Shown here piece after piece: positions 23,253-56,830 of a DNA stretch of 64,000 nt (position 1 is its first letter; the number at the start of each line of letters is the position of its first letter). A program made the translations under genes and the position numbers. The stretch spans positions 62,001 through 126,000 of the IMG/VR virus record IMGVR_UViG_3300027834_000005. One strand, 5' to 3'. The notes beneath the pieces were generated by a model. That model was not told the origin of the DNA. It made no database searches and was given only the letters and a program-made list of their open reading frames with translations.

Positions 23253-23315
23253 GGTTATCTCCTTGTCTCTAAGTTGAATATGTAGTATAGTGTATCCATA
23301 TAAGAAGTCAAGGGT

Positions 23316-23501
23316 TTATTCTAAAGAATCATAGTTTAAATTACTGAGGTCGTTTATCACGACTAAGAGCAGAGATAGCTGCGCGTCTATTCTGTTATAG
23401 TTTTGACTACCAGCCCTACACTTACTCAGTCTTATCTCTAAGTTGCTAATTGTTTGGCGATAGTCGTTGATTAGGTCTTGTATAGACATAGACGATTTCA
23501 T
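23316..23501 (-). CDS. Hypothetical early protein
   Basis: ATGA-coupled to upstream gene. Confidence 0.65.
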   Translation of the reverse strand: MKSSMSIQDLINDYRQTISNLEIRLSKCRAGSQNYNRIDAQLSLLLVVINDLSNLNYDSLE

Positions 23502-23665
23502 GATTTAAACCCACTGAATGCTTCTAGTTCTTCTCTGAATGCTCTCTTAGAGTCGTCGTCGTGATACCCTTCATCCATGCCCATGCATATGCCATGATTG
23601 ATACATGCCCATACCATGTTCTTAAGGGCCTCTTGTGCTTCTTCTGATAGTTGGTCGTAGGTCAT
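23498..23665 (-). CDS. Hypothetical early protein
   Basis: Start MTYDQL after AAGGA RBS and promoter. Confidence 0.7.
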   Translation of the reverse strand: MTYDQLSEEAQEALKNMVWACINHGICMGMDEGYHDDDSKRAFREELEAFSGFKS

Positions 23666-23875
23666 GATAATGTCCTTGTCTCTAAGTTGAATATGTAGTA
23701 TAGTGTATCTATATAAGAAGTCAAGGGTTTTATTCAATGTATTTCATATTAGAGGCAATATCTATTATTGTCGTTATAGCATTAGTAACGGCTTTATTAT
23801 GTATTATATGGCTTTAGTTGTTGACACTGTAGTTATGGTGTGTATACTGGGTGTATATTAAATAAGGGGATAGCT

Positions 23876-24205
23876 ATGGCTATTGTAGTTAAGGCAGACC
23901 AGAAACTGTTAGATCGTCTTAAGGACGCTTCTGAACATGATGCTGTATTTGATGAGCTAACAGCTAAGAGTAACGCAATTGATCCTAGTGATAGCATTGT
24001 GGGTGCGTTCCTTGCGTTTTACATGGGTGATGGCTATGCCTATTACTTATGTACTAGCGAATCTCCATTAGAAGTACAGCATATCCCTTTATGGGATGAA
24101 TGGGAGATAAACGTTAAAGGGTTTGATAAGCAATACCTTACGCAGAAAATAGTTAATGAGCGTAGAATTAATGCTCTTAAGTCTAAACAAACCTTGACAT
24201 TGTAG
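23876..24205 (+). CDS. Hypothetical early protein
   Basis: Repeated leader tatactgggtgtatattaaataaggggatagctATG. Confidence 0.75.
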   Translation: MAIVVKADQKLLDRLKDASEHDAVFDELTAKSNAIDPSDSIVGAFLAFYMGDGYAYYLCTSESPLEVQHIPLWDEWEINVKGFDKQYLTQKIVNERRINALKSKQTLTL

Positions 24206-24248
24206 TTATACTCGCTATACTGGGTGTATATTAAATAAGGGGATAGCT

Positions 24249-24572
24249 ATGGCTACCGACATTAAAGTAATACATATGAGTAATACCTCTGGTGGGTATA
24301 ATAACACTACGGTAAAGTCTGCCACGGACAATGTAACGCCTTTAGTGGTTGCTACACGTAAGTATATCATTACCTCTACGTTATTAGAAGCATGTAACAG
24401 TGACTACTCCCCTGTAACGTTTAAGGCTGAAGTATGGAACGATAGGCTATCGGAGTGGAAAGATGTATATTACTTGCATATTACCCATGAGCGTGCTACT
24501 ATGTCTGTGGATGATTTTGTATCTAAGCATACTAAAGAAATAGAAGATATAATGCTTGCTATTTTGTTTTAG
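24249..24572 (+). CDS. Hypothetical early protein
   Basis: Same repeated leader. Confidence 0.75.
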   Translation: MATDIKVIHMSNTSGGYNNTTVKSATDNVTPLVVATRKYIITSTLLEACNSDYSPVTFKAEVWNDRLSEWKDVYYLHITHERATMSVDDFVSKHTKEIEDIMLAILF

Positions 24573-24612
24573 TGGGTTATACTGGGTGTATATTAATTAA
24601 GGGGAGAATCCC

Positions 24613-24801
24613 ATGCCACAGAAAATATCTTTTGGTACAGCCTTGATACTAGGTTTCCTAGGTCATCAGTTCGGTATGTCCGTATTACAGTTAGGTGCTA
24701 TCATTGTATTAGTTGCTGTTATAGCTACGGCTAGTTATGTACAGGGATTGCGTGAAGGTGATAAGATGGGTGCTGGTCGTATTAGACGTGGTGAAGGCTA
24801 A
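24613..24801 (+). CDS. Small membrane protein
   Basis: Two hydrophobic segments. Confidence 0.7.
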   Translation: MPQKISFGTALILGFLGHQFGMSVLQLGAIIVLVAVIATASYVQGLREGDKMGAGRIRRGEG

Positions 24802-24950
24802 TGTCTGATTGTGAACATAGTGATGATGGTGGAAAAACAACGTGTAGTGATATGTATAACTGCTGTAGTTGTGGCGGTAATGATTGTGGCTGTCGCTATT
24901 GTTTTGATTGTAATGCATGTGAAGAATGTTTAGGGGATGATGATGAGTAA
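24801..24950 (+). CDS. Cys-rich metallothionein-like peptide (49 aa)
   Basis: MSDCEHSDDGGKTTCSDMYNCCSCGGNDCGCRYCFDCNACEECLGDDDE; TAATG coupling; below ORF-track cutoff. Confidence 0.65.
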   Translation: MSDCEHSDDGGKTTCSDMYNCCSCGGNDCGCRYCFDCNACEECLGDDDE

Positions 24951-25233
24951 AAGAAAAATGTTATTAGCTGGTGTTATAGCTGCTAGTGTTATGTTAGTGG
25001 GTTGTAATGATGTTATTAGTATATCACCTGAAGCTATAGAACTAGTTGAGCCTGTATGTGATACGAATGATGGTGTGTTTAAATATACCATTGAAGAGAC
25101 TAGTACCTATAACTATGTGTCTGTTACGTGTCTTAACAATGCTAATTTTAATCGTGTGGCGTTTTATAACAGTTCTAATGAACCGGCTTATGCGCCAGTA
25201 TATAAATACTTAGCGGATAAAAAACAAGAATAA
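24937..25233 (+). CDS. Putative lipoprotein
   Basis: Lipobox LVGC after hydrophobic leader. Confidence 0.7.
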   Translation: MMMSKRKMLLAGVIAASVMLVGCNDVISISPEAIELVEPVCDTNDGVFKYTIEETSTYNYVSVTCLNNANFNRVAFYNSSNEPAYAPVYKYLADKKQE

Positions 25234-39892: not shown

Positions 39893-40219
39893 ATGAAGAC
39901 CGGAACTAAACTATTCGCAGTAACAGACCAACATGTAATTATCCCTCTAGTGGTAACATCGTTAGCGACAAGAGAGGACTACACTAAGGCCGTGACTGAG
40001 ATCGTTGGTGAGTCCACTAGCCATGCCCAATGCCATCACGAAACATACTTCATGTCTATGTGGTTAGAAGAAGACGGAAGCATAGACAAGGCTAACGTAT
40101 TCACGGACGTAGAGCAAGCCAAAGTGTATGCTATCGAGAGAGTGGATATGGCATTAGCTACTATCAACAGACAAATCTGCTCATTGGGCAATCAAAGAAA
40201 TAAGTTAGAAAACACTTGA
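39893..40219 (+). CDS. Hypothetical early protein
   Basis: Family-1 leader. Confidence 0.75.
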   Translation: MKTGTKLFAVTDQHVIIPLVVTSLATREDYTKAVTEIVGESTSHAQCHHETYFMSMWLEEDGSIDKANVFTDVEQAKVYAIERVDMALATINRQICSLGNQRNKLENT

Positions 40220-40276
40220 CTCCAAACGTAACCATGCTATTATGGTTACACATTAACAAGTTCTGAGGAGAACACT

Positions 40277-40609
40277 ATGAACACTGCAACTTTATTACAT
40301 GGTTCATTTCGCGTTGGTCGTTTCAAGCACACTACATCTAAGCGTGCTGTTAACGTAGCATGTCACGTAGGTAACATCAACGGTGAGTCTAGTTTCTTCT
40401 TCACCCGTGATGGTGCGCCCGTGTTCATTCCTAGCAATGAGCTATTGAATGACTGGGAGCAGATCGAAGAGCACAAAGGTATGTGGTCTACTATCCGTCC
40501 GTGTAGCAAGCGTACTTTCTCACAAGTGAAGACGTTAGGTCAAGTCATGGAATCGTCCGCACCTGTAAAGCGTGAGAAGTTAAGCTTAAAGAAAAAAGAA
40601 TTAGTATAA
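40277..40609 (+). CDS. Hypothetical early protein
   Basis: Family-1 leader. Confidence 0.75.
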   Translation: MNTATLLHGSFRVGRFKHTTSKRAVNVACHVGNINGESSFFFTRDGAPVFIPSNELLNDWEQIEEHKGMWSTIRPCSKRTFSQVKTLGQVMESSAPVKREKLSLKKKELV

Positions 40610-40673
40610 ACACTTGACATTGTGTGTAGCCATGCTATTATGGTTACACATTAAACGTTCTAAGGGGAACAGT

Positions 40674-40784
40674 ATGAAATTTTTAGCCGGTATCGCAGTA
40701 GGTGTATTCTTGTCACCAATCTTATTACCTCTGTTCTTCTTTGCCATTGGTACAATCAGTACAGCAGGCAGAATCATTTTTTAA
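40674..40784 (+). CDS. 36-aa hydrophobic peptide
   Basis: MKFLAGIAVGVFLSPILLPLFFFAIGTISTAGRIIF behind family-1 promoter and RBS. Confidence 0.65.
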   Translation: MKFLAGIAVGVFLSPILLPLFFFAIGTISTAGRIIF

Positions 40785-40835
40785 GATAGCACATCTAAAT
40801 GCCATTTTTAAGTCACATTTTTAAATGGCATTATT
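40784..40835. repeat. 13-bp-period repeat array, copy 2
   Basis: agatagcacatct aaatgccattttt aagtcacattttt aaatggcattatt. Confidence 0.7.
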
Positions 40836-40889
40836 GACTTTCAATCCTGAATGACATACCATGTATATATTACATACGAGGATACACCC

Positions 40890-41135
40890 ATGGCCACACA
40901 AGTATTAAGCGTTAGGCAGATAGATGATGCGCTATGCGACCCAATCATGGTAGCGTCTTATCGTAAAGAACGCCACTTCGTTAGACTATCTTTTGATCCA
41001 CGTGATTGTAAGTTTGCTCTGGCCTATGGTATCACTCGCCTCAAGCAAGACTTTAAGTCATTCAAGCATGACGAGAAAGAAGCAGCCGTCACCATGTACA
41101 ATGATTTAGTGGAGAAATACAATGCCAGCATTTAA
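40890..41135 (+). CDS. Hypothetical early protein
   Basis: GAGGA RBS. Confidence 0.7.
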   Translation: MATQVLSVRQIDDALCDPIMVASYRKERHFVRLSFDPRDCKFALAYGITRLKQDFKSFKHDEKEAAVTMYNDLVEKYNASI

Positions 41136-41379
41136 AGCGAAAGATACCAAAGTACTTGAGCTAGCCAATCAAGCAATCAGTCAGTTCTGTAAAGAGACTG
41201 GAGTCATGGAGCCAACCGCTGGCTACGCTAATATATTGAGACGTGAATTAATTCATATCTTACTACAACAAGATGCCGCTACAAAAGCAGCTATCCTTGC
41301 TGACGCCACGGGCGGTGATGCAGACAGTTACCCAACCCTAACACAAACAATCAATAATTGTCAAGGCGGACTCGTTTGA
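41122..41379 (+). CDS. Hypothetical protein
   Basis: GGAG RBS. Confidence 0.65.
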   Translation: MPAFKAKDTKVLELANQAISQFCKETGVMEPTAGYANILRRELIHILLQQDAATKAAILADATGGDADSYPTLTQTINNCQGGLV

Positions 41380-41386
41380 GTTCGTT

Positions 41387-41402
41387 TGTTTCACGTGAAA
41401 CA
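41387..41402. promoter_or_regulatory. parS site (ParB binding)
   Basis: TGTTTCACGTGAAACA, perfect consensus. Confidence 0.85.
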
Positions 41403-41407
41403 TTGTA

Positions 41408-41516
41408 AACGATAATCATTCTCATTAGGGGATAGCGGACAGGAGTAGTGTTTATCTTCGCCTCCTCCAGCGCCTCTATCTGTAACCATTATACATCTCC
41501 CCCATTACATAGCAAG
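41408..41516 (-). ncRNA. Non-coding cassette B
   Basis: -10 at 41488-41493(-); core 41440-41451; Fur-like box 41408-41426; parS follows. Confidence 0.55.
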
Positions 41517-41611
41517 CATTTTATTCATTTAATTTAATTCATTATTCGCTTGACTTCACATGAGCTTAGAGTAGAATGGGAACCATATTAAATAGTTCTG
41601 AGGGGAACAAC

Positions 41612-42364
41612 ATGATAAACCAAGACACCATGAAAGCAATGATCAATCTATTCGGTAGACTACGTCCATTCGATTTACGTGATGCACGTGAAGATAGAGT
41701 TAACGCAGTCATGTGGTCAATCATTGAAGCATTCAACTGGAACGCCAATGGTAACGAAAACATTACGCAAATCCAACGTGCCATGATTAGCCACTTCGAC
41801 AACGACCTAATGTTACGCGCCTGTAAGTTTGCACGTGAGCGTATCTCCGAACTACACACTCATGCGTTCGATGCGTGTACGGTTGGCGGTGATGACTCAT
41901 ACAACGACTGCGTATCTCATGCTGTAGGTATGGGCGAAGACTATTTCAATAAAGCAATGGCAAATCCAGCCATTCTTAACAGCCTAGATTATAAAGAATC
42001 GTTTAGTTATGTATTATTCAGTGAGGCGAGCGATTTTGAAAAGTTTGATACACACTATCACAAACAACAAGCGTATATGCTTTGGGGTCAACTAAACTTC
42101 CACCACGACAGCTACAAGTCGGATAATGCTGGATTATGGGCAAAACTAGCAGTGCGCTTTGATGACGTGCTGGGTGCAATTGGTGAACAAAACGACACAC
42201 CAGATATGGACGCACTATGGTTAGCCGTTGGTGACTTGCAGAATAGAGAAGTATACAGTGAGCTATCTGGTTTCTGCTATAGCTATCCTAACATTCTTAA
42301 GGATATGGCCGAGTACTTGTTTGACTGGGACAAGCAAAAGAATACACAAAAAGAATTGTTTTAG
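41612..42364 (+). CDS. DUF4240-like protein
   Basis: GGDDSYNDCVSHAVGMGEDYFNKAMANP resembles the DUF4240 motif. Confidence 0.55.
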   Translation: MINQDTMKAMINLFGRLRPFDLRDAREDRVNAVMWSIIEAFNWNANGNENITQIQRAMISHFDNDLMLRACKFARERISELHTHAFDACTVGGDDSYNDCVSHAVGMGEDYFNKAMANPAILNSLDYKESFSYVLFSEASDFEKFDTHYHKQQAYMLWGQLNFHHDSYKSDNAGLWAKLAVRFDDVLGAIGEQNDTPDMDALWLAVGDLQNREVYSELSGFCYSYPNILKDMAEYLFDWDKQKNTQKELF

Positions 42365-47631: not shown

Positions 47632-48125
47632 CTATCAATGCAACTATAAATTTTAAGCTTGATCTGTATGGCGATAATACGCATAGTTTCCTATCTAGGA
47701 TAGATATTTTATCTTACCCTCAAAACAAAGATATATGCGACATAATACGCGAGTATATCAGAGATGGCTTGACAGTAGAGTGCGAATACGTTAATGACAT
47801 TGACGGTCTATATGAGTACTACGTCCCTATATACTTTGAAGACGTGAAGCCAGAAGAGCTAAGCGATATAGCTATGAAAGCAGCTGATTCTATAGCTGAA
47901 GCGGTAGCAAGTTTTAAGAGCGAGTACCACGTTGATGAGTACTACAAAATATACGAACGCTTCGAGAAAGTATACACCGACTACATGATAGATGGCGAAA
48001 CTGTAATGTATGAGCGTTTGGCTGGCAAGGGGTATCGTCTGAGAAACTGGCAGAATGCAGAGAGCTATCTATATACACGTTTATTTTGCAAAAAGACCTT
48101 GACGCCACGTTCAGAGCTGGTATAG
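47628..48125 (+). CDS. Hypothetical protein
   Basis: ATGA coupling. Confidence 0.7.
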   Translation: MTINATINFKLDLYGDNTHSFLSRIDILSYPQNKDICDIIREYIRDGLTVECEYVNDIDGLYEYYVPIYFEDVKPEELSDIAMKAADSIAEAVASFKSEYHVDEYYKIYERFEKVYTDYMIDGETVMYERLAGKGYRLRNWQNAESYLYTRLFCKKTLTPRSELV

Positions 48126-48150
48126 TAGACACATAACTAAGGGGAACACT

Positions 48151-48315
48151 ATGAACATTGAACACTTCGTAAACGGCAAGAGCACAGGCACTATCACTCC
48201 AGACACCAAAGCATGGCGTGATCATTCCATCAACTTCCAAGCACGTAGTGATGCTCACTACCAACCATCGCGCCCGTCTAAAGTGACGTTTGTTGAGGTG
48301 CCGCGCAATGCCTAA
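48151..48315 (+). CDS. Small hypothetical protein (54 aa)
   Basis: AAGGGGAAC RBS; MNIEHFVNG. Confidence 0.6.
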   Translation: MNIEHFVNGKSTGTITPDTKAWRDHSINFQARSDAHYQPSRPSKVTFVEVPRNA

Positions 48316-48508
48316 TCTAATCGCATGTGTCGTGATGGCACTCTGTTTATTATTCAATCTAGTGCGCTGGTTAATGCTACCAGAGGACATACGCCTAGCT
48401 ATTGACATATTCATGCTGTTTGTTTTCGTGGAACTTTTTTTGACTTTCTGCTTCTTAATGAATTTTGATAAAGCTAAGAAATATATCTCGAAGTACTGCC
48501 GATCATAA
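48308..48508 (+). CDS. Small membrane protein
   Basis: Two hydrophobic segments. Confidence 0.55.
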   Translation: MPNLIACVVMALCLLFNLVRWLMLPEDIRLAIDIFMLFVFVELFLTFCFLMNFDKAKKYISKYCRS

Positions 48509-48514
48509 CAGTCT

Positions 48515-48579
48515 GAATAGCAAATGTAAATGCCATTTTTGAACCACATTTTTGAATGGCATTTTTGAATCTCATACCC
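48515..48579. repeat. 13-bp-period repeat array, copy 3
   Basis: gaatagcaaatgt aaatgccattttt gaaccacattttt gaatggcattttt gaatctcataccc. Confidence 0.75.
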
Positions 48580-48744
48580 GCGCCACACTCCCGCGCCACA
48601 CACGACACGTCAGTCACACGCGAACATATACTCGCACGAATACATACGTGCATATAATATCACACATTATATACATATAGCGCTTGACAACGTGTGTACC
48701 TATGCTATTATAGGCACACATTAACAAGTTCTGAGGGGAACACC

Positions 48745-49047
48745 ATGAGTACAACATCTACTAAGTCATTGCGCATTAGAACCTACACTGGTTATATTAA
48801 CACACAAGCCATCGTCATTGGCGAGCACGTAGCTACTAACACCTACATTGCCGCGAAAGGCATCATAGGCGGTCTGTGGGACGTAGACCATACCGAGGCA
48901 CAAGAGATTATCATGGGCGCTATCGTAGGCACTGAAGCGATACACAGAACTAGATTATGTAGTGATGGTGATGTAACAATGAGATTGATAGTGGATGTCA
49001 TAGAAACAGACGCCACTGAGATCAAAGATGAGTATGCATACGCATAG
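48745..49047 (+). CDS. Hypothetical early protein
   Basis: Family-1 leader. Confidence 0.75.
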   Translation: MSTTSTKSLRIRTYTGYINTQAIVIGEHVATNTYIAAKGIIGGLWDVDHTEAQEIIMGAIVGTEAIHRTRLCSDGDVTMRLIVDVIETDATEIKDEYAYA

Positions 49048-49106
49048 TCACACAGTCCACCATCATACCACACATGTAGTTATCCGCAACATGTTTATTC
49101 ATACAG

Positions 49107-49180
49107 TACTGGTTGGATATACAGTACTGGTTGGATATACAGTACTGGTTGGATATACAGTACTGGTTGGATATACAGTG
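49107..49180. repeat. Four tandem LexA SOS boxes (18-bp repeat)
   Basis: CTG-GTTGGATATA-CAG at 49109, 49127, 49145, 49163; reverse strand reads TACTGTATATCCAACCAGTA. Confidence 0.8.
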
Positions 49181-49189
49181 GATTTGGTA

Positions 49190-49283
49190 AACGCGAATCA
49201 TTCGCATTCGCATTCTCATTACCCAAATAGCAGGCAGGAGTGGTGTAGCTCTATTATACTAGCATTCACAACAACAACACAAG
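49190..49283 (-). ncRNA. Non-coding cassette C
   Basis: TTGTGT..TATAAT(-); core starts at predicted +1 (49246); Fur-like hexamers 49190-49220. Confidence 0.55.
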
Positions 49284-49481
49284 CTTTATTTCATCTAATT
49301 AAATATAAAATGAATGAATAAAAAGCTTTACATATACAGCCAGTTCTATAATATAGGTGGCACTTGTTTAGAACAACAAACAAAAAGAAAGACAAATAAA
49401 AGCTTGCAATACTCTTTCACTTGTCTATAATGAGAATCATCAAAACAAAAAAACAAAAACTTTTATATAACGGGCTTACTT

Positions 49482-50102
49482 ATGAACATTATCTCTTCTT
49501 TGAAAAAAGCAACATTGGCTAAAATCGAATCAGCACAGGCGAATGCAGCCATTACTAAACGCGCAAACGGCGCACGTATCACAGCGGGACAAGTGGCGGC
49601 AATCGCGGCAACTAAGCCAGCACTGGTTAAACTAACACAAGTCACGCCTGTAGCACTAGCAGCAGCCAACAAACAGCGCAACATTGTTAAGGTAGCACAA
49701 ACAGTGTGTATCTTGCCTAATGATTCGGACGTATACACAAGCGCCATTAAGCACACGGCAAAAGGTAGCGCCGAAGATATCGCAGCATATACGCCACGCG
49801 AAAGCAAGTATAATCATTGCGGTAGTGCTTATGCAGCGCTAACACTTAAATCAGATGATAGCAAGGAATATTTATATACAATTCAAGACAATTGTACAAA
49901 ATCTGTACTAGTTGACGCCGACACTGGCACAGTTTTAGAAAAAGCGCAAGTTGCTGAATTAATGACCAAATCAGCAGCCAAAAAATTGCTAGGTGATACC
50001 AGCGCAGAAAAAACCAACAAAACCTTTGACATTGAGCACGATGTATGCGTACGCACAATCAAGATGGAAAATGTTATTAAGATGGAAGAAGTATCCATCT
50101 AA
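49482..50102 (+). CDS. Hypothetical early protein (paralog of 37276..37839)
   Basis: Tandem promoters upstream; shared C-terminal motifs. Confidence 0.8.
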   Translation: MNIISSLKKATLAKIESAQANAAITKRANGARITAGQVAAIAATKPALVKLTQVTPVALAAANKQRNIVKVAQTVCILPNDSDVYTSAIKHTAKGSAEDIAAYTPRESKYNHCGSAYAALTLKSDDSKEYLYTIQDNCTKSVLVDADTGTVLEKAQVAELMTKSAAKKLLGDTSAEKTNKTFDIEHDVCVRTIKMENVIKMEEVSI

Positions 50103-50116
50103 TAGAACGCTAACAC

Positions 50117-50145
50117 AAAAGACTGGCATTGTCCAGTCTTTTTTT
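50117..50145. terminator. Bidirectional terminator
   Basis: aaaagactgg-cattgt-ccagtc followed by T-run; near-copy at 55192-55218. Confidence 0.75.
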
Positions 50146-50147
50146 AT

Positions 50148-50251
50148 ATACGAATGATTCTCAATTGCAAATGATTATCATTCTCATTACCCAAATACCA
50201 TGCAGGAGTGGTGTAAGGTCATTATACTACCAACCACAACAACAACACAAG
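50148..50251 (-). ncRNA. Non-coding cassette D
   Basis: -10 at 50221-50226(-); core 50203-50214; Fur box 50170-50188; runs into the bidirectional terminator. Confidence 0.6.
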
Positions 50252-50374
50252 CTTTATTTCATCTAAATTAAATATAAAAAGAATGAATAAAAAGCTTTAC
50301 ATACTCAGCTCGTTCTATATAATGATTACATCAGCTAAGGGATTACCTCTTAGCACCCTTTGAGAGTATTTGCT

Positions 50375-50926
50375 ATGTCTTCACGTAGAATTAATGTATC
50401 AGTTGAACAGTTAGCCACAGAAGCGAAACAGAACGAATTAGCCCGTGTGGACGCAATTAATGCAACTCGTAACATGCTCAATAAGTTACAGCCCTTAATT
50501 GCTGCGCGTATAGCCAAAGGTATTAAGTTTAAAAACGACGGTAGCCCATACGCTAAAGACGCCAAAGATATTGCCGCTATCGTAGCCAATGCGGTTGGTG
50601 GTGAAAAAATACATGTTATGGTAATGTATAAAGAAATCCCTAACCCAATTAGACCTATTCCTTCGACTATACGCATACAGGCAAGGGCGCACTATAGCAA
50701 AATTAGCTCAATATATAACGACTTGAACGGAAAACCGGACGTAAGCGGCCAGAGCTGCGAGGAAAATGCCTATGTGGGTGTTGCTGAGTCTTTCGAGTAC
50801 AAAGATAAACCGCTTTTATCAGTGGATCAAGTAGTAAAGGCTAAAGCCAGAATCACAGAAATAGACGACCTGATAAGTGCATTAAATGGCGAGCGTTCCG
50901 CACTTGCGCACTCTATTGATCTTTAA
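50375..50926 (+). CDS. Hypothetical early protein
   Basis: Family-2 promoter. Confidence 0.75.
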   Translation: MSSRRINVSVEQLATEAKQNELARVDAINATRNMLNKLQPLIAARIAKGIKFKNDGSPYAKDAKDIAAIVANAVGGEKIHVMVMYKEIPNPIRPIPSTIRIQARAHYSKISSIYNDLNGKPDVSGQSCEENAYVGVAESFEYKDKPLLSVDQVVKAKARITEIDDLISALNGERSALAHSIDL

Positions 50927-51018
50927 TACACATTAATACTTTACATACTCAGCTAGTTCTGTATAATGATTACATCAGCTAGGGGATTGTCCCCTAGCAC
51001 CTTTTAAGAGTATTTGCC

Positions 51019-51312
51019 ATGACTACTGTCGCTGCTATTGCCACCGCTACGCCTAAAGATATGATGATAAAACATGTTAACTTTTGTTTCCCTGTCGCTT
51101 GTGCCCGTGATGGACAAGATTTCTTTAAGCACGCATCAGACACTATACACTTAAACTCTAAAAATGTCATCTTGAAGTTTACGCCGTTGTATGATAGCAA
51201 GACGCGCACTGTCGAGAAAGTATTCGATAACTTTCTAAAAAGCCACGGGTGGTACTTAGAAGCGTACACGGTAACAGAACTAATCTTAAGAAAACGCATA
51301 ACACACAATTAA
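51019..51312 (+). CDS. Hypothetical early protein
   Basis: Family-2 promoter. Confidence 0.7.
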   Translation: MTTVAAIATATPKDMMIKHVNFCFPVACARDGQDFFKHASDTIHLNSKNVILKFTPLYDSKTRTVEKVFDNFLKSHGWYLEAYTVTELILRKRITHN

Positions 51313-51321
51313 ACCGTTCTA

Positions 51322-51337
51322 TGTTTCACGTGAAACA
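51322..51337. promoter_or_regulatory. parS site
   Basis: TGTTTCACGTGAAACA, perfect consensus. Confidence 0.85.
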
Positions 51338-51357
51338 TTACCCACTATATGTGGGTA

Positions 51358-51439
51358 AATGCGTATCATTCTCATTAAGTAAATAGCGGACAGGAGTGGT
51401 GTAAGGTCATTATACTACCAACCGCAACAACAACACAAG
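51358..51439 (-). ncRNA. Non-coding cassette E
   Basis: -10 at 51409-51414(-); core 51391-51402; Fur-like box 51358-51376; parS follows. Confidence 0.6.
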
Positions 51440-51528
51440 CTTTTTCTTTATTATCTTTTTGCACAATAAAGCTTTACATACTCAGCTAGATCTGTATAAT
51501 TCAGTAATGTTTATAAGGTTCTATGTGT

Positions 51529-51939
51529 ATGAAAACTACAGACAAGCAAACAAATATATCAGGTTTTTGGCGTATGTGCGCGAGCATCATATTTGACGTT
51601 GTTGCGCACGACGGTGGCGGCTTATCATACTCTTATTACCACGGCAGACAGTTAAGGTCTGGATGTATGCATGATCCTAAGCTATTCACGCAGAATTACA
51701 CACAGTTTAACGTAGATAGCGCAGAAAAAGACCTTGAAGCATTTATTAATGTATTCAATACTTTACATGCTGCCAATGACGCGCTAACAGAGGAAAAACA
51801 ATTTATATTTGATAAAGTTGACACACTAATAACTTTACTGTATAGGGCAGGCGTGGATTATGATGGTGTTACACTAGACATTGACTATAGAAAAGACCAC
51901 CCAACGTATAGCAGAAATAGTAAGTTTTCTTTTCAATAA
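51529..51939 (+). CDS. Hypothetical early protein
   Basis: Family-2 promoter. Confidence 0.7.
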   Translation: MKTTDKQTNISGFWRMCASIIFDVVAHDGGGLSYSYYHGRQLRSGCMHDPKLFTQNYTQFNVDSAEKDLEAFINVFNTLHAANDALTEEKQFIFDKVDTLITLLYRAGVDYDGVTLDIDYRKDHPTYSRNSKFSFQ

Positions 51940-52021
51940 AGCTTTACATACTCAGCTAGATCTGTATAATTGTTAACAAGTCGGGGGCATACAGCAACCG
52001 ACACAGTTTAGAGTATTTGTT

Positions 52022-52399
52022 ATGACTTTTTCTATCGTTAGTTCTACTGCAAAAACCATCTTCACCCCTAGTGCATCTACTCCGCGCCATGAACACGACT
52101 GCGACTGTTGTACATTTACTGGTACTTACGGCGACTATGATCTTTATCATTGCCCTAAGAGCGATGAGGGCACGATCATAGCACGTTTCGGCATTGATGG
52201 CGATTACTATAGCCGCCCGTTATCCTTATGTAAAAGTTCAATGAGCTGTGATCATCCATTGTCTGCCGCCCTTGCTGCATATAAGGAGCACACAGAACAA
52301 CCCGTAACAATTGGCGATCTTATCAAGCGACAAATGGACGAGTCAACCTTTAAAGAAGAACATCTAGCGCATTTTAATAAATGTCTTAATAGGGAATAA
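52022..52399 (+). CDS. His/Cys-motif hypothetical protein
   Basis: PRHEHDCDCC..DLYHC. Confidence 0.75.
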   Translation: MTFSIVSSTAKTIFTPSASTPRHEHDCDCCTFTGTYGDYDLYHCPKSDEGTIIARFGIDGDYYSRPLSLCKSSMSCDHPLSAALAAYKEHTEQPVTIGDLIKRQMDESTFKEEHLAHFNKCLNRE

Positions 52400-52486
52400 A
52401 AACCCTTTACATACTCAGCTAGTTCTGTATAATTGTTAACAAGTCGGGGGCATACAGCAACCGACACCTTTTTGAGAGTATTTACC

Positions 52487-52663
52487 ATGGCTACATTAGT
52501 TGCTGCGAAACAAGTTAAAGCTGGCGATCTTATCATGGACAAGGGCACAAAGCGACAAGTGTCTATGGTTCGCGTATCAGGTGGCGGCGTCGATATCTAT
52601 TGTGTATGTGGCGAGCATTTAGACAAGATAGCCGATCAACAAGTATCATTGGTGGAGGTGTAA
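52487..52663 (+). CDS. Small hypothetical protein
   Basis: Family-2 leader. Confidence 0.65.
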   Translation: MATLVAAKQVKAGDLIMDKGTKRQVSMVRVSGGGVDIYCVCGEHLDKIADQQVSLVEV

Positions 52664-52665
52664 TC

Positions 52666-52857
52666 ATGGCTAGTGTATACGGTGTTAATAGTCCTCGTAG
52701 TGGTCACATAGATGTAAGCAATACGGAACGTGGTGCAAAGAACTACGCAACGCGCAACGGCTACACAGAAGTAACAGAGCGCAACACAAATCACATGACG
52801 GCTATTATCATAGCTGAAAAACATGATGGTATGTGGTGCAAACCTTATTCATTATAG
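52666..52857 (+). CDS. Small hypothetical protein
   Basis: GGAGG RBS. Confidence 0.65.
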   Translation: MASVYGVNSPRSGHIDVSNTERGAKNYATRNGYTEVTERNTNHMTAIIIAEKHDGMWCKPYSL

Positions 52858-52943
52858 TAGTTGACATACTCAGTCAGTTCTATATAATTGTTAACAAGTC
52901 GGGGGCATACAGCAACCGACACAAATCAAAAACGGGATTTATC

Positions 52944-53198
52944 ATGGCTTCATACAAACTTTCTACTATTGCCGCTATCTACGCACTACAACAAGCCATC
53001 GTTGCCGATAAAGCACCTTGCACCCTAACGCAACATTACTTTGCCAAGCAAGTGGTACAGATTGCCGAGCAAGTAGATAACGAGTTTATCATTGATACGC
53101 CTTTAGAGGAAGTCAAAGCAAGCGTTCAATGCGCGTATGATTTTGCTAAGGTTGTGGCGGATAGTGGCGGCCTTGTATACACTCAGGCGAGTGTATAA
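52944..53198 (+). CDS. Small hypothetical protein
   Basis: Family-2 leader. Confidence 0.65.
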   Translation: MASYKLSTIAAIYALQQAIVADKAPCTLTQHYFAKQVVQIAEQVDNEFIIDTPLEEVKASVQCAYDFAKVVADSGGLVYTQASV

Positions 53199-53269
53199 CT
53201 ATGGCTATCACGTTATCAGTTATCATGGTTCTTTCTTTTCCTTTAGTCTTTAGCCTGTAGGGGTTTATT

Positions 53270-53614
53270 ATGCTATTAGTCATTAATGCACTAGAACAAG
53301 TCAAAAGCGGCACTGATGGCGCGGCCACTATAATCTCTCATATTAACGCGCACCCACTCAAAGCGCTTATTGCTGAAGGGCTTTATGAAAAGGTACGGGA
53401 ACGCGATAACATAGCAGATAAACGCTATTCATTACAGGCACGCCGTAAAAAGGCCGACAAGTACACAAACACCGACGCTATGGATAAAGACATAGAAGCG
53501 TTAGGGTTGCAAGAAGATGCCCTAGATGGCGATATAGAGGCCATAGTGCATGAATCTAAGAAAATGCTAAACTTTGAAATTGCATTGATTGTAAACGAAT
53601 TCTCAAAATATTAA
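53270..53614 (+). CDS. Hypothetical coiled-coil protein
   Basis: 114-aa ORF. Confidence 0.65.
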   Translation: MLLVINALEQVKSGTDGAATIISHINAHPLKALIAEGLYEKVRERDNIADKRYSLQARRKKADKYTNTDAMDKDIEALGLQEDALDGDIEAIVHESKKMLNFEIALIVNEFSKY

Positions 53615-53632
53615 ATAAGCCTTTGGGGGGAC

Positions 53633-53711
53633 TTGTGTCCCCTCTTTTTTTGTGTATAATAGAACCACACCACTCCTGCCTGCTATTCCACTAATGAGAA
53701 TGATTATCATT
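53633..53711 (+). ncRNA. Non-coding cassette F
   Basis: TTGTGT-N16-TATAAT; core 53667-53678 at predicted +1; Fur box AATGAGAATGATTATCATT at 53693-53711. Confidence 0.6.
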
Positions 53712-53716
53712 CACAC

Positions 53717-53732
53717 TGTTCCACGTGAAACA
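53717..53732. promoter_or_regulatory. parS site
   Basis: TGTTCCACGTGAAACA fits TGTTNCACGTGAAACA. Confidence 0.8.
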
Positions 53733-53756
53733 TAAACTAACACGCAATCAACTCTA

Positions 53757-53878
53757 AATGAGAATGATTCCCAACAACTGATAGCAGACAGGAGTAGTGT
53801 TTGCCTCCTAGCTCCGCAGCTAGCCCCAATCCCTTATCTCTTAATACCTATTATAATGATCTGAATACATAACGCAAG
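53757..53878 (-). ncRNA. Non-coding cassette G (converges on F)
   Basis: -10 at 53850-53855(-); core 53789-53800; partial Fur-like box at 53757. Confidence 0.55.
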
Positions 53879-54116
53879 CATTATTTCACCTAAATTAAAT
53901 ACAAAATTAGATGATTATATAGTTGACACTAACAGCAGAATGATTAATAATAGCTTCACTGTTTAGGCAAGCCCTAACAGCGCTAAAACAGATATGAAAT
54001 TATCTGAAAATAAAACAAGTAATCGCTTGACTCTATAATCACTAAGCGATACTATATAACAACTGAAACCAATAACGAGTTTCGGACAAAGCCCCAAAGG
54101 GGCAAAGGCTATTATT

Positions 54117-55172
54117 ATGAATACTTCTACTCCTTCAAACGTTGTTTCTCTTTTCTCTAAAACTTCTGCCGCTGTAGCTGTTACTACTGCCGCCGTGGAC
54201 TATGCGCCTGTACGTCAAGAGGCACGCGAGAACGGTCTGTCTACGCCTAACTGGAACGTTCCTACATGTAAGCGTGAAGATATCGGCCTAACGTTACATG
54301 CTCAGCTAGACGCTAAAGGCGTGTTCTATACTGTTGATGGCCGTGATAACTTCGTACAGAATAATGCGGGTGAATTTGTAAGCACTGGCTCGAAAACTAT
54401 CTACAATGAAACGAATGAAAAAACTCTTGGCGTTATGTCTAAAGGTTATGAGATTGTCCAGAATGAAAACATCTTCACTTCTCTTTTTGCAGAGATTGAA
54501 CGTGCTGGCCTAGACGTCTCTAATGCCTTCACACGCGTTAGAATGGATAACGACGGTCAAAGAGTAATGGCGGAAATCATCTTTCCAGAAACATCGTTCG
54601 ACGTCGCTGTAGGTGATACCGTCGCCTTGTCTATCACTGCAATCAATAGCTTTGATGGTAGTGGCGCTTTTCACCTTAAAATGGGCGCGTTTCGTTTCAT
54701 CTGTGCTAACGGTATGGTATCAGCTAACGGTATCATTGAGTATAAGCACCAACACAGCAAAGGCTTAAGCGCTTCAAGTGCTGCTAAGCATATCGCTAAC
54801 GGCATGACTCAATATAATGAAGACAAAGAGTCTTTATTAGAACAAGCCAACACACAAGTAAACGCGCAAGATGTTTATGAAGCGTTAGCAATCATGAACA
54901 AAATTGATACTAAACTAGCGCCAACCTATGAGCAATACCAGCTTGTTATTCGCCCAACACTTAAACGTGAGCCAGCTATAGAGCGTCATATGGGCTTATG
55001 GAATAAGTACAAGGCAGAGCTAGGCAATACCCAATGGGCACTTAACAACGTGCTAACGCATATCAGCACACATGGCGACAAGCCAGAGTATACAGCAGAT
55101 CAAAACATTACTACCCGCTCAGGCAAAGAGAAGTTAGTAGGTGTTGCACTACGTAACATGTTAGCGGCATAA
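54117..55172 (+). CDS. DUF932/DUF945-family protein
   Basis: LGVMSKGYEIVQNE, NSFDGS, GAFRFICANG, TQWALNNVLTH. Confidence 0.8.
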   Translation: MNTSTPSNVVSLFSKTSAAVAVTTAAVDYAPVRQEARENGLSTPNWNVPTCKREDIGLTLHAQLDAKGVFYTVDGRDNFVQNNAGEFVSTGSKTIYNETNEKTLGVMSKGYEIVQNENIFTSLFAEIERAGLDVSNAFTRVRMDNDGQRVMAEIIFPETSFDVAVGDTVALSITAINSFDGSGAFHLKMGAFRFICANGMVSANGIIEYKHQHSKGLSASSAAKHIANGMTQYNEDKESLLEQANTQVNAQDVYEALAIMNKIDTKLAPTYEQYQLVIRPTLKREPAIERHMGLWNKYKAELGNTQWALNNVLTHISTHGDKPEYTADQNITTRSGKEKLVGVALRNMLAA

Positions 55173-55652: not shown

Positions 55653-55725
55653 AACCCTCGGTAAACCCTTGGTGAACCCTTGGTAAACCCTTGGGCGACG
55701 TAGTCGCTACCCTCGGTAAACCTTG
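55653..55725. repeat. 11-bp direct repeats (island right boundary)
   Basis: aaccctcggta aacccttggtg aacccttggta aacccttgggc, preceded by C-runs and A/T tracts. Confidence 0.7.
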
Positions 55726-56387
55726 TACATGATCCTGTGCTTATGTTCTATCCACTCACACAACTCTTCTGCCGACACATTAGGGGGTGGGAGTGACCAC
55801 GCTTTCCGTGTTCCTGACGTCGCAGCCCCAAAGGGCAGCTCTGTTAGTGGTGGGGCAAGCGTTCCGACTCCTCGACTCGACACTCCTAGCGGCACTTTAG
55901 TGGATACTTTAGTGGATACTTTAGTGGATACTTTAGTGGATACACTAGAGGAAAAGTCACCACTATGATTAGTTATGGTGGGAATGTAGGGTGCATAGTA
56001 GAACCCACTGTCAGAATCACGTTGGGGGATATACTTCCGATCCATGTAGACCCCCAGATATAGCCCTGTGAAGGCCCTGACGCGATCTTTTGGATCATAG
56101 AGTATATCGGTTAGGATTTCATCCTCTTCGCCTCCTAGCTCGTGCTGGAACTGTGTGGGGCCATCTACTATCCCTGTGACGGAACTATAGAAGTCACCCA
56201 CAACAGAACCCCATAAATTTACTTGTATGTCTATGTCGTGGAGTTTAGATGTATTGAGGAAATGATAGAACATGTCTCCGGCAGCATTTCTAAAGCATAT
56301 GTGACGGTTGTAGTAGACTTTATGCAGTTCCATGCCTATTGAATGAATCATGTTTTTTGATCGCATCATGTTTTTTGATTGCATCAT
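55707..56387 (-). CDS. Hypothetical protein with repeat expansions
   Basis: STKV x4 (12-bp repeat 55894-55941); DSGFYYAPYIP motif. Confidence 0.55.
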   Translation of the reverse strand: MMQSKNMMRSKNMIHSIGMELHKVYYNRHICFRNAAGDMFYHFLNTSKLHDIDIQVNLWGSVVGDFYSSVTGIVDGPTQFQHELGGEEDEILTDILYDPKDRVRAFTGLYLGVYMDRKYIPQRDSDSGFYYAPYIPTITNHSGDFSSSVSTKVSTKVSTKVSTKVPLGVSSRGVGTLAPPLTELPFGAATSGTRKAWSLPPPNVSAEELCEWIEHKHRIMYKVYRG

Positions 56388-56830
56388 GTTTTTATGTTCT
56401 CGCGTAATAGTCTTTCCACTGTTCGAGTGTCTACTAGCGCACCGTATACTGCGATGCAGGATGGTGGCATACTGCATGCAGTGGCGTAGTTTCTAGTGTC
56501 TTCGTATTTATGAAGGAAGTGGTAGAATGCCACTCCCTGTCTTTCACTCTTGAGTTCATCGAATTCATAATCGTCAAATGCGTCCAATCCTTCTCCGCTC
56601 AGTTCGTAGTTGAATTGATCTTCACGGCTAAACTCTACCATACGGACGGTATAAAATTCTTCGCCGATATTAATTCCGAAAGTAGAATTCTTTTTCTTCT
56701 TTTCGGAATGCATATAGGCAAGTGAGAATGAATGCGCATAGTGGATGAATTTTTCTCCATCCTGTCTTGCAATAGAAAAATGATTTCTATATCCAAATGG
56801 GTATACTTTATGAAATGAATAATTATGCAC
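56384..56830 (-). CDS. Tag-bearing protein
   Basis: SREDQFNYELSG. Confidence 0.7.
   Translation of the reverse strand: MHNYSFHKVYPFGYRNHFSIARQDGEKFIHYAHSFSLAYMHSEKKKKNSTFGINIGEEFYTVRMVEFSREDQFNYELSGEGLDAFDDYEFDELKSERQGVAFYHFLHKYEDTRNYATACSMPPSCIAVYGALVDTRTVERLLRENIKT

What the first reader, a model, noticed from the sequence alone, without database searches (positions are those of the whole stretch)
49091..49180. The 18-bp tandem repeat is a head-to-tail array of four LexA SOS boxes
Seen: (TACTGGTTGGATATACAG)x4 gives CTG-N10-CAG four times, with flanks matching TACTG...CAGTA, plus a degenerate fifth copy upstream (ATG-N10-CAG). It does not overlap an obvious gene promoter. Known: this is the gammaproteobacterial LexA operator. 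Inference: a LexA decoy to derepress recA and repair genes, or an SOS-sensitive roadblock for the cassette-C transcript.
Basis: partly seen in the sequence, partly recalled or inferred. Interest (0 to 1): 0.75.

Follow-up and report, generated by a model that had tools for sequence, protein, structure and literature searches.

The report
Tandem LexA operator array in phage
A marine jumbo phage carries, between two early genes, two to four perfect head-to-tail copies of a sequence that scores as a strong binding site for LexA, the bacterial DNA-damage repressor; this suggests the phage reads or manipulates its host's SOS state, but binding has not been tested.

Summary
Window 49101-49179 is a perfect 18-bp x 4.4 tandem repeat, the top-scoring repeat in the 347-kb phage genome. 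It makes four CTG-N10-CAG boxes that share a TA.

The resemblance to LexA boxes is not chance. Scored with a matrix from 18 E. coli LexA boxes, each box has heterology index 2.25 (last box 3.35). That is better than the recA and sulA boxes. About 0.001 such sites are expected in the genome, and the rest of the genome is at background.

The same 18-bp phasing of two strong LexA boxes occurs in 14 other viral contigs. It occurs in none at 20- or 21-bp phasing.

The array lies in a 434-bp gap, overlaps no recognisable promoter, and is not coding. It sits at the 5' edge of a repeated intergenic module that contains a Fur-box-like motif.

An otherwise identical assembly has two units instead of four. 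Relatives at about 94% identity keep the unit. Relatives at about 60% lack the array, though one carries a single strong box in the same position.

Most likely it is a real LexA operator array acting as an SOS-sensitive barrier. LexA titration remains a live rival. The host is unknown and binding is untested.

The parts
48684..48711 (+). sigma-70-like promoter (TTGACA-16-TATTAT) of the upstream 100-aa gene
   Evidence: 11 of 12 matches. The promoter and 5' leader are repeated elsewhere in the genome, seen as multi-mapping contigs.
48745..49047 (+). upstream gene, 100 aa, orphan. No intrinsic terminator lies between its stop codon and the array.
   Evidence: no homologues; codon score 0.316, typical of a gene; no strong terminator
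49089..49108 (.). degenerate upstream box ACATGTTTATTCATACAGTA (ATG instead of CTG), HI 9.7; probably not a binding site. Its last 7 bases (ATACAGT) are the microhomology at which the unit repeats.
49101..49179 (.). perfect tandem repeat, 18 bp x 4.4 (unit TACTGGTTGGATATACAG)
   Evidence: Two units instead of four in assembly L034.
49107..49126 (.). LexA-type box 1; reads TACTGTATATCCAACCAGTA on the minus strand; HI 2.25
49125..49144 (.). LexA-type box 2, HI 2.25; shares TA with box 1
49143..49162 (.). LexA-type box 3, HI 2.25
49161..49180 (.). LexA-type box 4 (ends CAGTG), HI 3.35; unchanged in the ~94% relative L038
49190..49222 (+). Fur-box-like element, expanded here by a CATTCG x3.7 hexamer repeat. 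It is the first part of the repeated intergenic module.
49231..49245 (+). 15-mer CAGGCAGGAGTGGTG ('box C') of the repeated module. It is invariant in L038 and present in L032.
49252..49257 (+). -10-like TATTAT of the module. No -35 hexamer lies upstream, so if this is a promoter it needs a factor other than plain sigma-70.
   Evidence: inference from the sequence
49327..49431 (+). two sigma-70-like promoters (49327-49354 and 49404-49431) in front of the 206-aa gene
49482..50102 (+). downstream gene, 206 aa, function unknown. It is conserved in relatives at 57-96% identity and is followed by a strong terminator at 50117-50142.
49028..49321 (+). ORF97, which spans the array (TVLVGY x4); judged not to be a gene
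   Evidence: codon score -0.03 against 0.19 +/- 0.08; no homologues; not called in L034; indel near its 3' end in L038

Best explanation
The repeat is a head-to-tail array of two to four high-affinity operators for the host's LexA repressor. They are laid out in the same overlapping 18-bp register (…CAG-TA-CTG…) that other phages use for double LexA boxes. The array arose by slippage at a 7-bp microhomology (ATACAGT) around a single box.

It overlaps no recognisable promoter. It lies in the transcribed spacer after a 100-aa early gene that has no terminator, directly upstream of a repeated regulatory module and the 206-aa gene. The most likely mode of action is therefore in cis. In an undamaged host, LexA dimers fill the array and form a protein barrier or insulator between the two cassettes. 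When free LexA falls, through SOS induction or dilution over many replicated phage genomes, the barrier opens and read-through into the module and the 206-aa gene rises.

Shown: the sequence, its statistics, its recurrence in other viruses, its position, and the copy-number difference. Inferred: that LexA binds, that the host is a gammaproteobacterium, and the barrier mechanism.

My confidence that LexA binds is about 0.75. My confidence in the whole statement including the cis-barrier mechanism is 0.4.
For: 1. Box quality. HI is 2.25 for three boxes and 3.35 for the fourth, using a matrix built from the 18 E. coli LexA boxes in Table 4 of PMC3009722. That is better than recA (5.24) and sulA (4.22) and ranks 6th of 18. 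P = 1.35e-9 per position, or 0.0009 expected in the genome.
2. The rest of the genome is at background: 4 sites with HI <= 10 against 4.7 expected. Generic AT-richness therefore does not explain the array.
3. Eighteen-bp tandem arrays that merely share the CAGTACTG junction in bacterial genomes have HI 10-22. The junction alone does not produce a good box.
4. Two strong boxes in exactly this phasing occur in 14 viral contigs, against 0 at 20-bp and 0 at 21-bp phasing. One of them (L064) is itself a perfect 2 x 18-bp repeat, and L060/L070 carry four boxes.
5. A relative (L026) has a single strong box (HI 4.9) 10 nt after the stop codon of an unrelated gene and about 90 nt upstream of another copy of the same module.
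6. In paralogous cassettes the same slot holds a terminator (50117-50142) or an 18-bp palindrome.
7. The unit is unchanged in a ~94% relative whose flanks have substitutions.
8. The nearest cultured phages infect Pseudomonas and Vibrio. The phage uses TTGACA/TATAAT promoters.
9. The phage has no LexA-like DNA-binding domain of its own.
Against: No binding data exist and the host is unknown. LexA has no well-established role as an elongation roadblock. The 206-aa gene has its own sigma-70-like promoters downstream of the array, so a barrier would control little unless those promoters are weak. The array is absent from relatives at ~60% protein identity and from distant TerL relatives. Copy number differs (2 against 4) between otherwise identical assemblies. 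Both facts are also what a young, unconstrained repeat would show. Weak promoter-like hexamers inside the units (TGGATA-18-TACAGT, 8 of 12 matches, read directly from the sequence) cannot be excluded as an embedded LexA-repressed promoter.
Confidence: 0.4

Rival explanations
1. LexA sponge. The boxes are real LexA sites but act in trans. As the phage genome replicates to tens or hundreds of copies, 2-4 very strong boxes per copy soak up free LexA. This derepresses the host SOS regulon without DNA damage. The many Fur-box-like sites in the same region could do the same for Fur.
For: The array overlaps no promoter. Box affinity is predicted to be higher than for most chromosomal operators. Copies are perfect and their number varies. 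SOS induction works through a fall in the pool of unbound LexA, and operator-bound LexA is not cleaved (PMC3159453). LexA is present at about 1,300 molecules per E. coli cell (PMC2994835), so a few hundred extra strong sites are of the right order of magnitude. About ten Fur-box-like sites lie in the same 31-kb region, three of them within 3 mismatches of the 19-bp consensus against 0.05 expected.
Against: There are only 2-4 sites per genome. lexA is autoregulated, which buffers titration. Titration would matter only late in infection, when host transcription is usually already displaced. The phage has its own RecA/UvsX-like recombinase. The relative L026 has a single box. I found no natural precedent in the literature searched.
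Confidence: 0.22
2. Neutral repeat. A single LexA-like box, functional or a relic, was expanded by replication slippage. The extra copies do nothing.
For: The units are 100% identical. A 7-bp microhomology flanks the unit. Otherwise identical assemblies have 2 or 4 units. The array is absent at ~60% divergence. The genome holds other perfect short arrays, including a CATTCG x3.7 repeat 20 bp downstream.
Against: The seed box itself is too good to be chance. Doublets in exactly this register are selected for in other phages. The ~94% relatives keep at least two units.
Confidence: 0.17
3. Iterons for another protein. A phage-encoded or other host dimeric DNA-binding protein recognises the CAGTACTG palindrome (or the 18-bp unit), and the LexA likeness is convergent.
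For: The slot upstream of the module holds other palindromes in paralogous cassettes (ATGTTTCACGTGAAACAT), which suggests a set of operator sites for several factors. The neighbouring genes are of unknown function.
Against: All 20 positions fit the LexA matrix, not only the 8-bp junction. The phage has no LexA-like DNA-binding domain. No DNA-binding fold was found in the flanking proteins.
Confidence: 0.1
4. Structural nucleic-acid element. The array of palindromes folds into a long RNA hairpin in the 3' UTR of the 100-aa gene (stabiliser, RNase III site or pause site), or extrudes as a DNA cruciform.
For: The RNA fold of 49048-49230 gives -54.8 kcal/mol, z = -4.5.
Against: Any array of palindromic operators folds this way. 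No U-tract follows the hairpin. There is no Rfam match. The two-unit version forms only one 8-bp stem.
Confidence: 0.06
5. Coding repeat. The array encodes four TVLVGY hexapeptides within a 97-aa protein (ORF97, 49028-49321).
For: The frame is open and the period is a multiple of 3. JGI gene calls list the ORF.
Against: The codon score is -0.03 against 0.19 +/- 0.08 for 31 small genes. No homologue exists among 5.8 billion proteins. The ORF is not called in L034. Its His-rich parts come from the Fur-like DNA motif that recurs in non-coding spacers. The ~94% relative has an indel that truncates it.
Confidence: 0.03

Closest known systems
Chromosomal SOS boxes of E. coli and other Gammaproteobacteria (recA, sulA, umuDC, recN, dinI and others)
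   Same: 20-bp TACTG-N10-CAGTA palindrome. Every base of the phage box occurs in at least one validated E. coli box. HI 2.25 lies in the range of the strongest operators.
   Different: Chromosomal genes have one to three boxes (PMC3159453), and these overlap the promoter. Here there are two to four identical boxes in strict 18-bp register with no promoter over them.
Overlapping double SOS boxes of colicin operons (cka, cea and others), which bind two LexA dimers
   Same: Adjacent, overlapping LexA boxes occupied by more than one dimer give very tight repression (PMC2994835; PMC3159453).
   Different: Colicin boxes sit on the promoter of a lethal gene. From memory their phasing is about 15-16 bp rather than 18; I did not verify this here. 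There are two of them, and they are not a perfect tandem repeat.
18-bp-phased double LexA boxes in 14 uncultivated tailed-phage contigs
   Same: Identical architecture: …CAG-TA-CTG… with both boxes strong (HI 0.3-9.6). L064 is a perfect 2 x 18-bp repeat. L060/L070 have four boxes in 98 bp. L062 has a Fur-box-like site 60 bp away.
   Different: Most are doublets whose two boxes differ in the spacer, and they lie next to AT-rich promoter-like sequence. The host genomes are smaller phages (terminase, GP88, ArdC genes). No array of three or more identical units was found among them.
LexA-controlled phage switches (CTXphi rstA promoter, coliphage 186 tum, GIL01 P1 with gp7)
   Same: A phage uses the host's LexA directly as its sensor of DNA damage (GIL01: PMC4551915; CTXphi and 186 from my own knowledge).
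   Different: Those are temperate or carrier-state phages whose boxes lie at a lysogeny or lysis promoter. This is a 347-kb PA5oct-like myovirus with no tyrosine integrase detected and no promoter at the boxes.
Natural and laboratory titration sites for regulators (datA for DnaA; the Fur titration assay, FURTA)
   Same: A cluster of high-affinity sites that is not tied to a promoter and whose effect scales with copy number (own knowledge).
   Different: No titration effect has been shown here. No natural LexA-titrating array is known to me or was found in the papers searched.
CtrA boxes in lytic phages of Alphaproteobacteria
   Same: Virulent phages carry operators of a host global regulator to time their own expression (PMC9437464, listed; abstract only).
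   Different: A different regulator and host class, and single sites at promoters rather than a tandem array.

Membership tests
Gammaproteobacterial LexA operator (SOS box) | CTG-N10-CAG core with TACTG/CAGTA arms | tested here: met
   Four cores; three with full arms and the fourth ending CAGTG. One half-site is CTGG rather than CTGT, as in the ruvA, cho and dinG boxes of PMC3009722 Table 4.
Gammaproteobacterial LexA operator (SOS box) | Low heterology index against validated sites (the usual working limit is about 12-15) | tested here: met
   HI 2.25 x3 and 3.35 (symmetrised matrix: 4.68 and 6.29). Rank 6 of 18. P = 1.35e-9.
Gammaproteobacterial LexA operator (SOS box) | Bound by LexA in vitro or in vivo | not testable with these tools
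   The complex prediction of LexA x4 with 46 bp of the array was not folded by the tool and gives no evidence either way.
Gammaproteobacterial LexA operator (SOS box) | Host encodes a LexA of this specificity | tested here: inconclusive
   The host is unknown (metagenomic phage). The nearest cultured phages infect Pseudomonas (TerL 59%, sheath 51%) and Vibrio (RNR 56%). The sample is marine.
Gammaproteobacterial LexA operator (SOS box) | Overlaps the promoter or start site of the gene it represses | tested here: not met
   No sigma-70-like site reaching 9 of 12 matches lies within 49048-49326 on either strand. Only 8-of-12 hexamer pairs occur inside the units (read from the sequence).
Overlapping / tandem LexA operators | Two or more boxes in a fixed register that allows neighbouring dimers | tested here: met
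   The 18-bp register with shared TA recurs in 14 viral contigs, against 0 at 20 bp and 0 at 21 bp. Simultaneous occupancy itself was not tested.
Regulator-titrating (decoy) site cluster | Several high-affinity sites away from any promoter, on a replicon that reaches high copy number | tested here: met
   High copy number during infection is inferred, not measured.
Regulator-titrating (decoy) site cluster | Measurable derepression of the regulon when the cluster is present | not testable with these tools
   Needs a reporter assay.
Protein-coding hexapeptide repeat (ORF97) | Coding signal, homologues, conservation of the frame | tested here: not met
   Codon score about 3 sd below the small genes. 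No homologue. Truncating indel in L038.
Replication-origin iterons | Iterons next to an initiator gene, or at a strand-switch or AT-rich unwinding element | tested here: not met
   The array lies inside a co-directional block of small early genes. The flanking proteins have no Pfam or PHROG replication domain. GC skew was not analysed.

The most novel reading that the evidence does not exclude
The phage carries operator 'sponges' for host global repressors: a tandem array of very strong LexA boxes plus about ten Fur-box-like sites in the same 31-kb early region. Once amplified by genome replication, these titrate LexA and Fur. That would switch on the SOS and iron-uptake regulons of the infected cell without DNA damage or iron starvation. 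The same titration would act as a copy-number timer that opens LexA-blocked read-through in the phage's own cassettes. The gokushovirus L025, with nine LexA-like boxes in 4.7 kb, would be a second, independent case.
Probability: 0.13. Interest if true: 0.85.

Novelty: new variant of a known kind. Interest (0 to 1): 0.6.

Why it matters
LexA boxes in phages are known almost only from temperate phages, as single or double operators at a switch promoter. Here a large, apparently virulent phage has a perfect, copy-number-variable array of operators stronger than those of recA or sulA, with no promoter over them. It lies next to Fur-box-like sites in a family of repeated regulatory modules. If LexA binds, it would show that jumbo phages wire early-gene cassettes to the host's stress regulators, or titrate those regulators. 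It would also supply a natural, easily testable example of tandem LexA occupancy at 18-bp spacing. The session also found that 18-bp phasing is the preferred layout of double LexA boxes in viral contigs (14 loci against 0 and 0). That is a general rule which can be checked in the many LexA-controlled mobile elements.

Tried and rejected
- DNA searches of the locus against GenBank phages, near and distant: no match.
- Searches for relatives of the two flanking proteins in viral contigs and phages: nothing.
- The 100-aa protein is an orphan.
- A metagenome scan with the exact unit returned only the sister assembly.
- Relatives cannot be drawn for a virus record, so the host could not be approached through genome kinship.
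- Rfam on 48000-54500: no family.
- The genome has no LexA DNA-binding domain. A Peptidase_S24 match at E = 0.05 was dismissed.
- PHROG and Pfam on ten neighbouring proteins: only unknown-function families.
- The AlphaFold2 model of the 206-aa protein was unstable (one of five models at pLDDT 74). It had no PDB match and only uncharacterised phage proteins in BFVD, and the ESM Atlas gave nothing.
- Complex prediction (LexA x4 plus 46 bp of the array) was not folded by the tool. It is evidence neither for nor against binding.
- Five large TerL relatives (52% identity) show LexA-like boxes at control level.
- The ORF97 coding hypothesis was rejected.
- Read laying could not settle copy number, because Logan contigs break inside the repeat in all four runs.
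- PMC2729051 (SOS boxes of bacteriocins) is not held, so the colicin box phasing quoted in the report is from memory.

Full report
**What the window is**

The window is bases 62001-126000 of a 347,232-bp IMG/VR virus record. The record was recovered from marine metagenomes, and close relatives occur in marine sediments.
- The large terminase and tail sheath are closest to Pseudomonas phage PA5oct (59% and 51% identity). More distant matches are Atu_ph07 and the Rak2-like jumbo phages.
- The ribonucleotide reductase is closest to Vibrio phages, at 56% identity.
- GC content is 40%.
- No tyrosine integrase is detected, and the phage has its own RecA/UvsX-like gene.

I infer a virulent jumbo myovirus of a marine gammaproteobacterium. 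The host itself is not known.

**Checking the observation**

- Tandem Repeats Finder reports 49101-49179, period 18, 4.4 copies, 100% identity, score 158. That is the best of 53 arrays in the whole genome.
- The unit TACTGGTTGGATATACAG gives CTG-N10-CAG at 49109, 49127, 49145 and 49163.
- The full TACTG-N10-CAGTA occurs three times. The fourth box ends CAGTG.
- The upstream 'fifth copy' (49089-49108) has ATG instead of CTG.
- The bare pattern CTG-N10-CAG is not enriched in the window: 11 seen against 12.6 expected. The bare pattern therefore proves nothing, and I scored the full box.

**Is the LexA likeness more than chance?**

I built a count matrix from the 18 E. coli LexA boxes printed in Table 4 of PMC3009722. 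I tallied it by hand and then verified the tally by script. From it I computed the Berg-von Hippel heterology index (HI).
- Read on the minus strand, the box is TACTGTATATCCAACCAGTA. Its left half is the perfect consensus. Every base of its right half occurs in validated boxes such as dinI, recN, cho, sulA and ftsK.
- HI is 2.25 for three boxes and 3.35 for the last. Under the same matrix recA scores 5.24 and sulA 4.22, so the phage box ranks 6th of 18.
- With a symmetrised matrix the value is 4.68, which again places it sixth.
- The probability that a random 20-mer of this base composition scores 2.3 or lower is 1.35e-9, so 0.0009 such sites are expected in the genome.
- Outside the array the genome has four sites with HI of 10 or lower, against 4.7 expected.
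- As a control for repeats that merely share the palindromic junction, I looked at 16 tandem arrays with CAGTACTG at 18-bp spacing in bacterial genomes. They have HI 10-22.

The match is therefore a property of the whole 20-mer, not of the junction or of AT-richness.

**Is the 18-bp head-to-tail layout natural?**

- A scan of 2.9 million viral contigs for two strong boxes sharing their TA (TACTGTAT-N7-CAGTACTGTAT-N7-CAGTA) found 14 loci. Fewer than 0.001 are expected by chance.
- In all 14 loci both boxes score well (HI 0.3-9.6), and the next phases on either side mostly do not.
- The same two boxes placed at 20-bp or 21-bp phasing gave 0 and 0 loci.
- These contigs are tailed phages of 38-45% GC with terminase, GP88 and ArdC genes.
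- L064 carries a perfect 2 x 18-bp repeat. L060/L070 carry two doublets, that is four boxes, in 98 bp. L062 has a Fur-box-like site 60 bp after the doublet.

The array in this window is thus the recurrent viral 'overlapping double box' iterated. Arrays with three or more CAGTACTG junctions are rare. Apart from this phage, only L025 was found.

**Anatomy of the locus**

The array lies in a 434-bp gap between two plus-strand genes.
- The upstream gene is a 100-aa orphan (48745-49047) with a sigma-70-like promoter at 48684-48711.
- The downstream gene is a 206-aa gene of unknown function (49482-50102). It has two sigma-70-like promoters at 49327-49431 and a strong terminator at 50117-50142.
- No promoter-like site overlaps the array, and no convincing terminator lies between the 100-aa stop codon and the array.

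ORF97 (49028-49321) spans the array and would encode TVLVGY x4. I judge it not to be a gene, for five reasons.
- Its codon score is -0.03, against 0.19 +/- 0.08 for 31 small genes and about 0.3 for both neighbouring genes.
- It has no homologue.
- One of three gene-calling runs omits it.
- Its His-rich stretches are produced by a DNA motif that recurs in non-coding spacers.
- A ~94% relative carries an indel that truncates it.

**The surrounding module**

Thirteen bases after the array begins a composite element that occurs at least seven times, all between window positions 22.8 and 53.8 kb. The 15-mer anchors are at 22904, 41436, 49231, 50199, 51387, 53668 (minus strand) and 53785. The element has four parts.
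- A Fur-box-like sequence with core AATCATTCTCATTA. Three copies are within 3 mismatches of GATAATGATAATCATTATC, against 0.05 expected.
- About 10 nt later, the 15-mer CAGGCAGGAGTGGTG.
- A -10-like (T/C)ATTATAC.
- A conserved CAAGC(T/A)TTATTT.

The 15-mer and the -10-like element are invariant over 41 nt in the ~94% relative, while the Fur-like part has seven changes. The ~57% relative L032 keeps both the Fur-like palindrome and the 15-mer.

The slot just upstream of the Fur-like box is variable. It holds a terminator in the 50199 copy. It holds an 18-bp palindrome, perfect at 51321 (ATGTTTCACGTGAAACAT) and with 1-2 mismatches in the others, in the 41436, 51387 and 53668/53785 copies. It holds the LexA array in the 49231 copy.

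What the module does is not established. It has no -35 hexamer, so if it is a promoter it needs another factor (inference).

**Evolution of the array**

- Three assemblies of the same phage are 100% identical over 6.6 kb, except that the ENA assembly has two units and the two JGI assemblies have four.
- This is either real length variation or assembly collapse. Logan contigs break inside the repeat in every run, so I could not decide between them.
- Relatives at about 92-95% identity in three sediment runs have contigs that break at the same points. The one contig I could read (L038) has the unit unchanged.
- Relatives with 57-64% identity in the 206-aa protein have no array upstream of that gene.
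- One of those relatives, L026, has a single strong LexA-like box (CACTGTTTACTTATACAGTA, HI 4.9). It lies 10 nt after the stop codon of an unrelated 98-aa gene and about 90 nt upstream of another copy of the module. About 0.004 such boxes are expected in all the relatives' loci scanned.
- Five large TerL relatives at 52% identity show no enrichment.
- The unit is flanked by a 7-bp direct repeat (ATACAGT). This is the signature of slippage around a single original box (read).

**Interpretation**

I am fairly confident, about 0.75, that these are real LexA operators. The box quality, the recurrence of the register in other viruses and the second box in a relative all point that way. The phage has no LexA-like DNA-binding protein of its own that could explain them.

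How the array is used is much less certain.
- Classical promoter occlusion is not supported, because no promoter lies over the boxes.
- Two mechanisms fit the geometry. One is a cis-acting LexA barrier or insulator in the slot where neighbouring cassettes have a terminator or a palindrome. It would open when free LexA falls. The other is a trans-acting sink for LexA once the genome is amplified.
- The literature read here supports the premise of both. Induction works by depleting unbound LexA, and bound LexA is protected from cleavage (PMC3159453). LexA is present at roughly 1,300 molecules per E. coli cell (PMC2994835).
- I rank the cis reading first (0.4 for the whole statement) because cis control is what phage LexA boxes normally do, and because a barrier acts from the first minute of infection.
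- I rank the sponge second (0.22).
- A neutral expansion of one box (0.17), a site for another protein (0.1), an RNA or DNA hairpin (0.06; fold z = -4.5) and a coding repeat (0.03) follow.

**Comparison with what is known, and novelty**

- By sequence the element meets the definition of a gammaproteobacterial SOS box.
- It fails the positional criterion, because it does not overlap a promoter.
- The biochemical and host criteria could not be tested.
- It resembles the overlapping double boxes of colicin operons and the LexA-controlled switches of CTXphi, 186 and GIL01.
- It differs from all of these in three ways: it is a perfect array of two to four units, it lies in an apparently virulent jumbo phage, and it is away from any promoter.
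- I found no description of such an array, or of a natural LexA sponge, in the papers searched.

I therefore class it as a new variant of a known kind.

Noticed in passing
window 22835-22918, 41386-41450, 49190-49260, 50147-50230, 51321-51400, 53668-53800: A composite intergenic module occurs at least 7 times, and only in this 31-kb stretch. It consists of a Fur-box-like motif, the 15-mer CAGGCAGGAGTGGTG, a -10-like ATTATAC and CAAGCTTTATTT. Three Fur-like sites are within 3 mismatches of the 19-bp Fur consensus, against 0.05 expected. The module is conserved in relatives L032, L026 and L038. It could be a phage-specific promoter or a set of host-regulator operators.
   Followed up: partly
window 51321-51338 (perfect), 41386-41403, 53716-53733: An 18-bp palindrome, ATGTTTCACGTGAAACAT, lies just upstream of the Fur-like box in three or four modules. 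This is the same slot that holds the LexA array at 49107-49180. The binding factor is unknown.
   Followed up: partly
L025 (IMGVR_UViG_3300026519_000250), 555-660 and whole contig: A 4.7-kb gokushovirus (Phage_F capsid, Chlamy_scaf scaffold) has nine LexA-like boxes with HI below 9.5, against about 0.05 expected. They include a TACTGTATACACGTACAGTA box followed in phase by an 18-bp repeat (unit TACTGGTTGTATTATCAG, 14 of 18 identical to this phage's unit). The repeat lies in the leader of the scaffold gene.
   Followed up: partly
L057-L070 (14 viral contigs): Double LexA boxes that share TA (18-bp phasing) are a recurrent layout in tailed-phage contigs. The same boxes at 20- or 21-bp phasing were found in none. 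L062 also has a Fur-box-like TAATGATAATGATTCTCATT 60 bp after the doublet.
   Followed up: partly
L026:1334-1353: A relative at 63% identity in the 206-aa protein has a single strong LexA-like box (HI 4.9). It lies 10 nt after the stop codon of an unrelated 98-aa gene, just after a CCCCTT/AAGGGG hairpin, and about 90 nt upstream of another copy of the module.
   Followed up: partly
window 49199-49220: The Fur-like motif next to the array is itself expanded by a CATTCG x3.7 hexamer repeat. This produces the 'HSHSHSH' stretch in ORF97. It is a second sign of slippage in this spacer.
   Followed up: no
window 55653-55694, 55894-55943, 56339-56393: Three more short tandem arrays (periods 11, 12 and 18; one perfect, x4.2) cluster where the plus-strand gene block meets the minus-strand tail-fibre block. 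Two of them lie inside the minus-strand ORF 55707-56477.
   Followed up: no
window 48684-48748 and 50206-50310: Promoter-plus-leader sequences are repeated across the genome. Contigs from other places in the genome lie on these stretches (depth jumps and loose ends). This fits early-gene cassettes that share regulatory ends.
   Followed up: no
L035 (JGI24723J26617_10000007): The same phage is assembled as a 410,284-bp contig in another JGI sample, against 347,232 and 347,153 bp elsewhere. The extra 63 kb was not examined. It could be terminal redundancy, a concatemer or real extra sequence.
   Followed up: no
G000 23032-24966, 39994-41961, 265164-266270, 337398-339620: The phage encodes an FtsH-like AAA/M41 protease, an NAD-dependent DNA ligase, a RecA/UvsX-like recombinase and a ClpB-like chaperone.
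   Followed up: no
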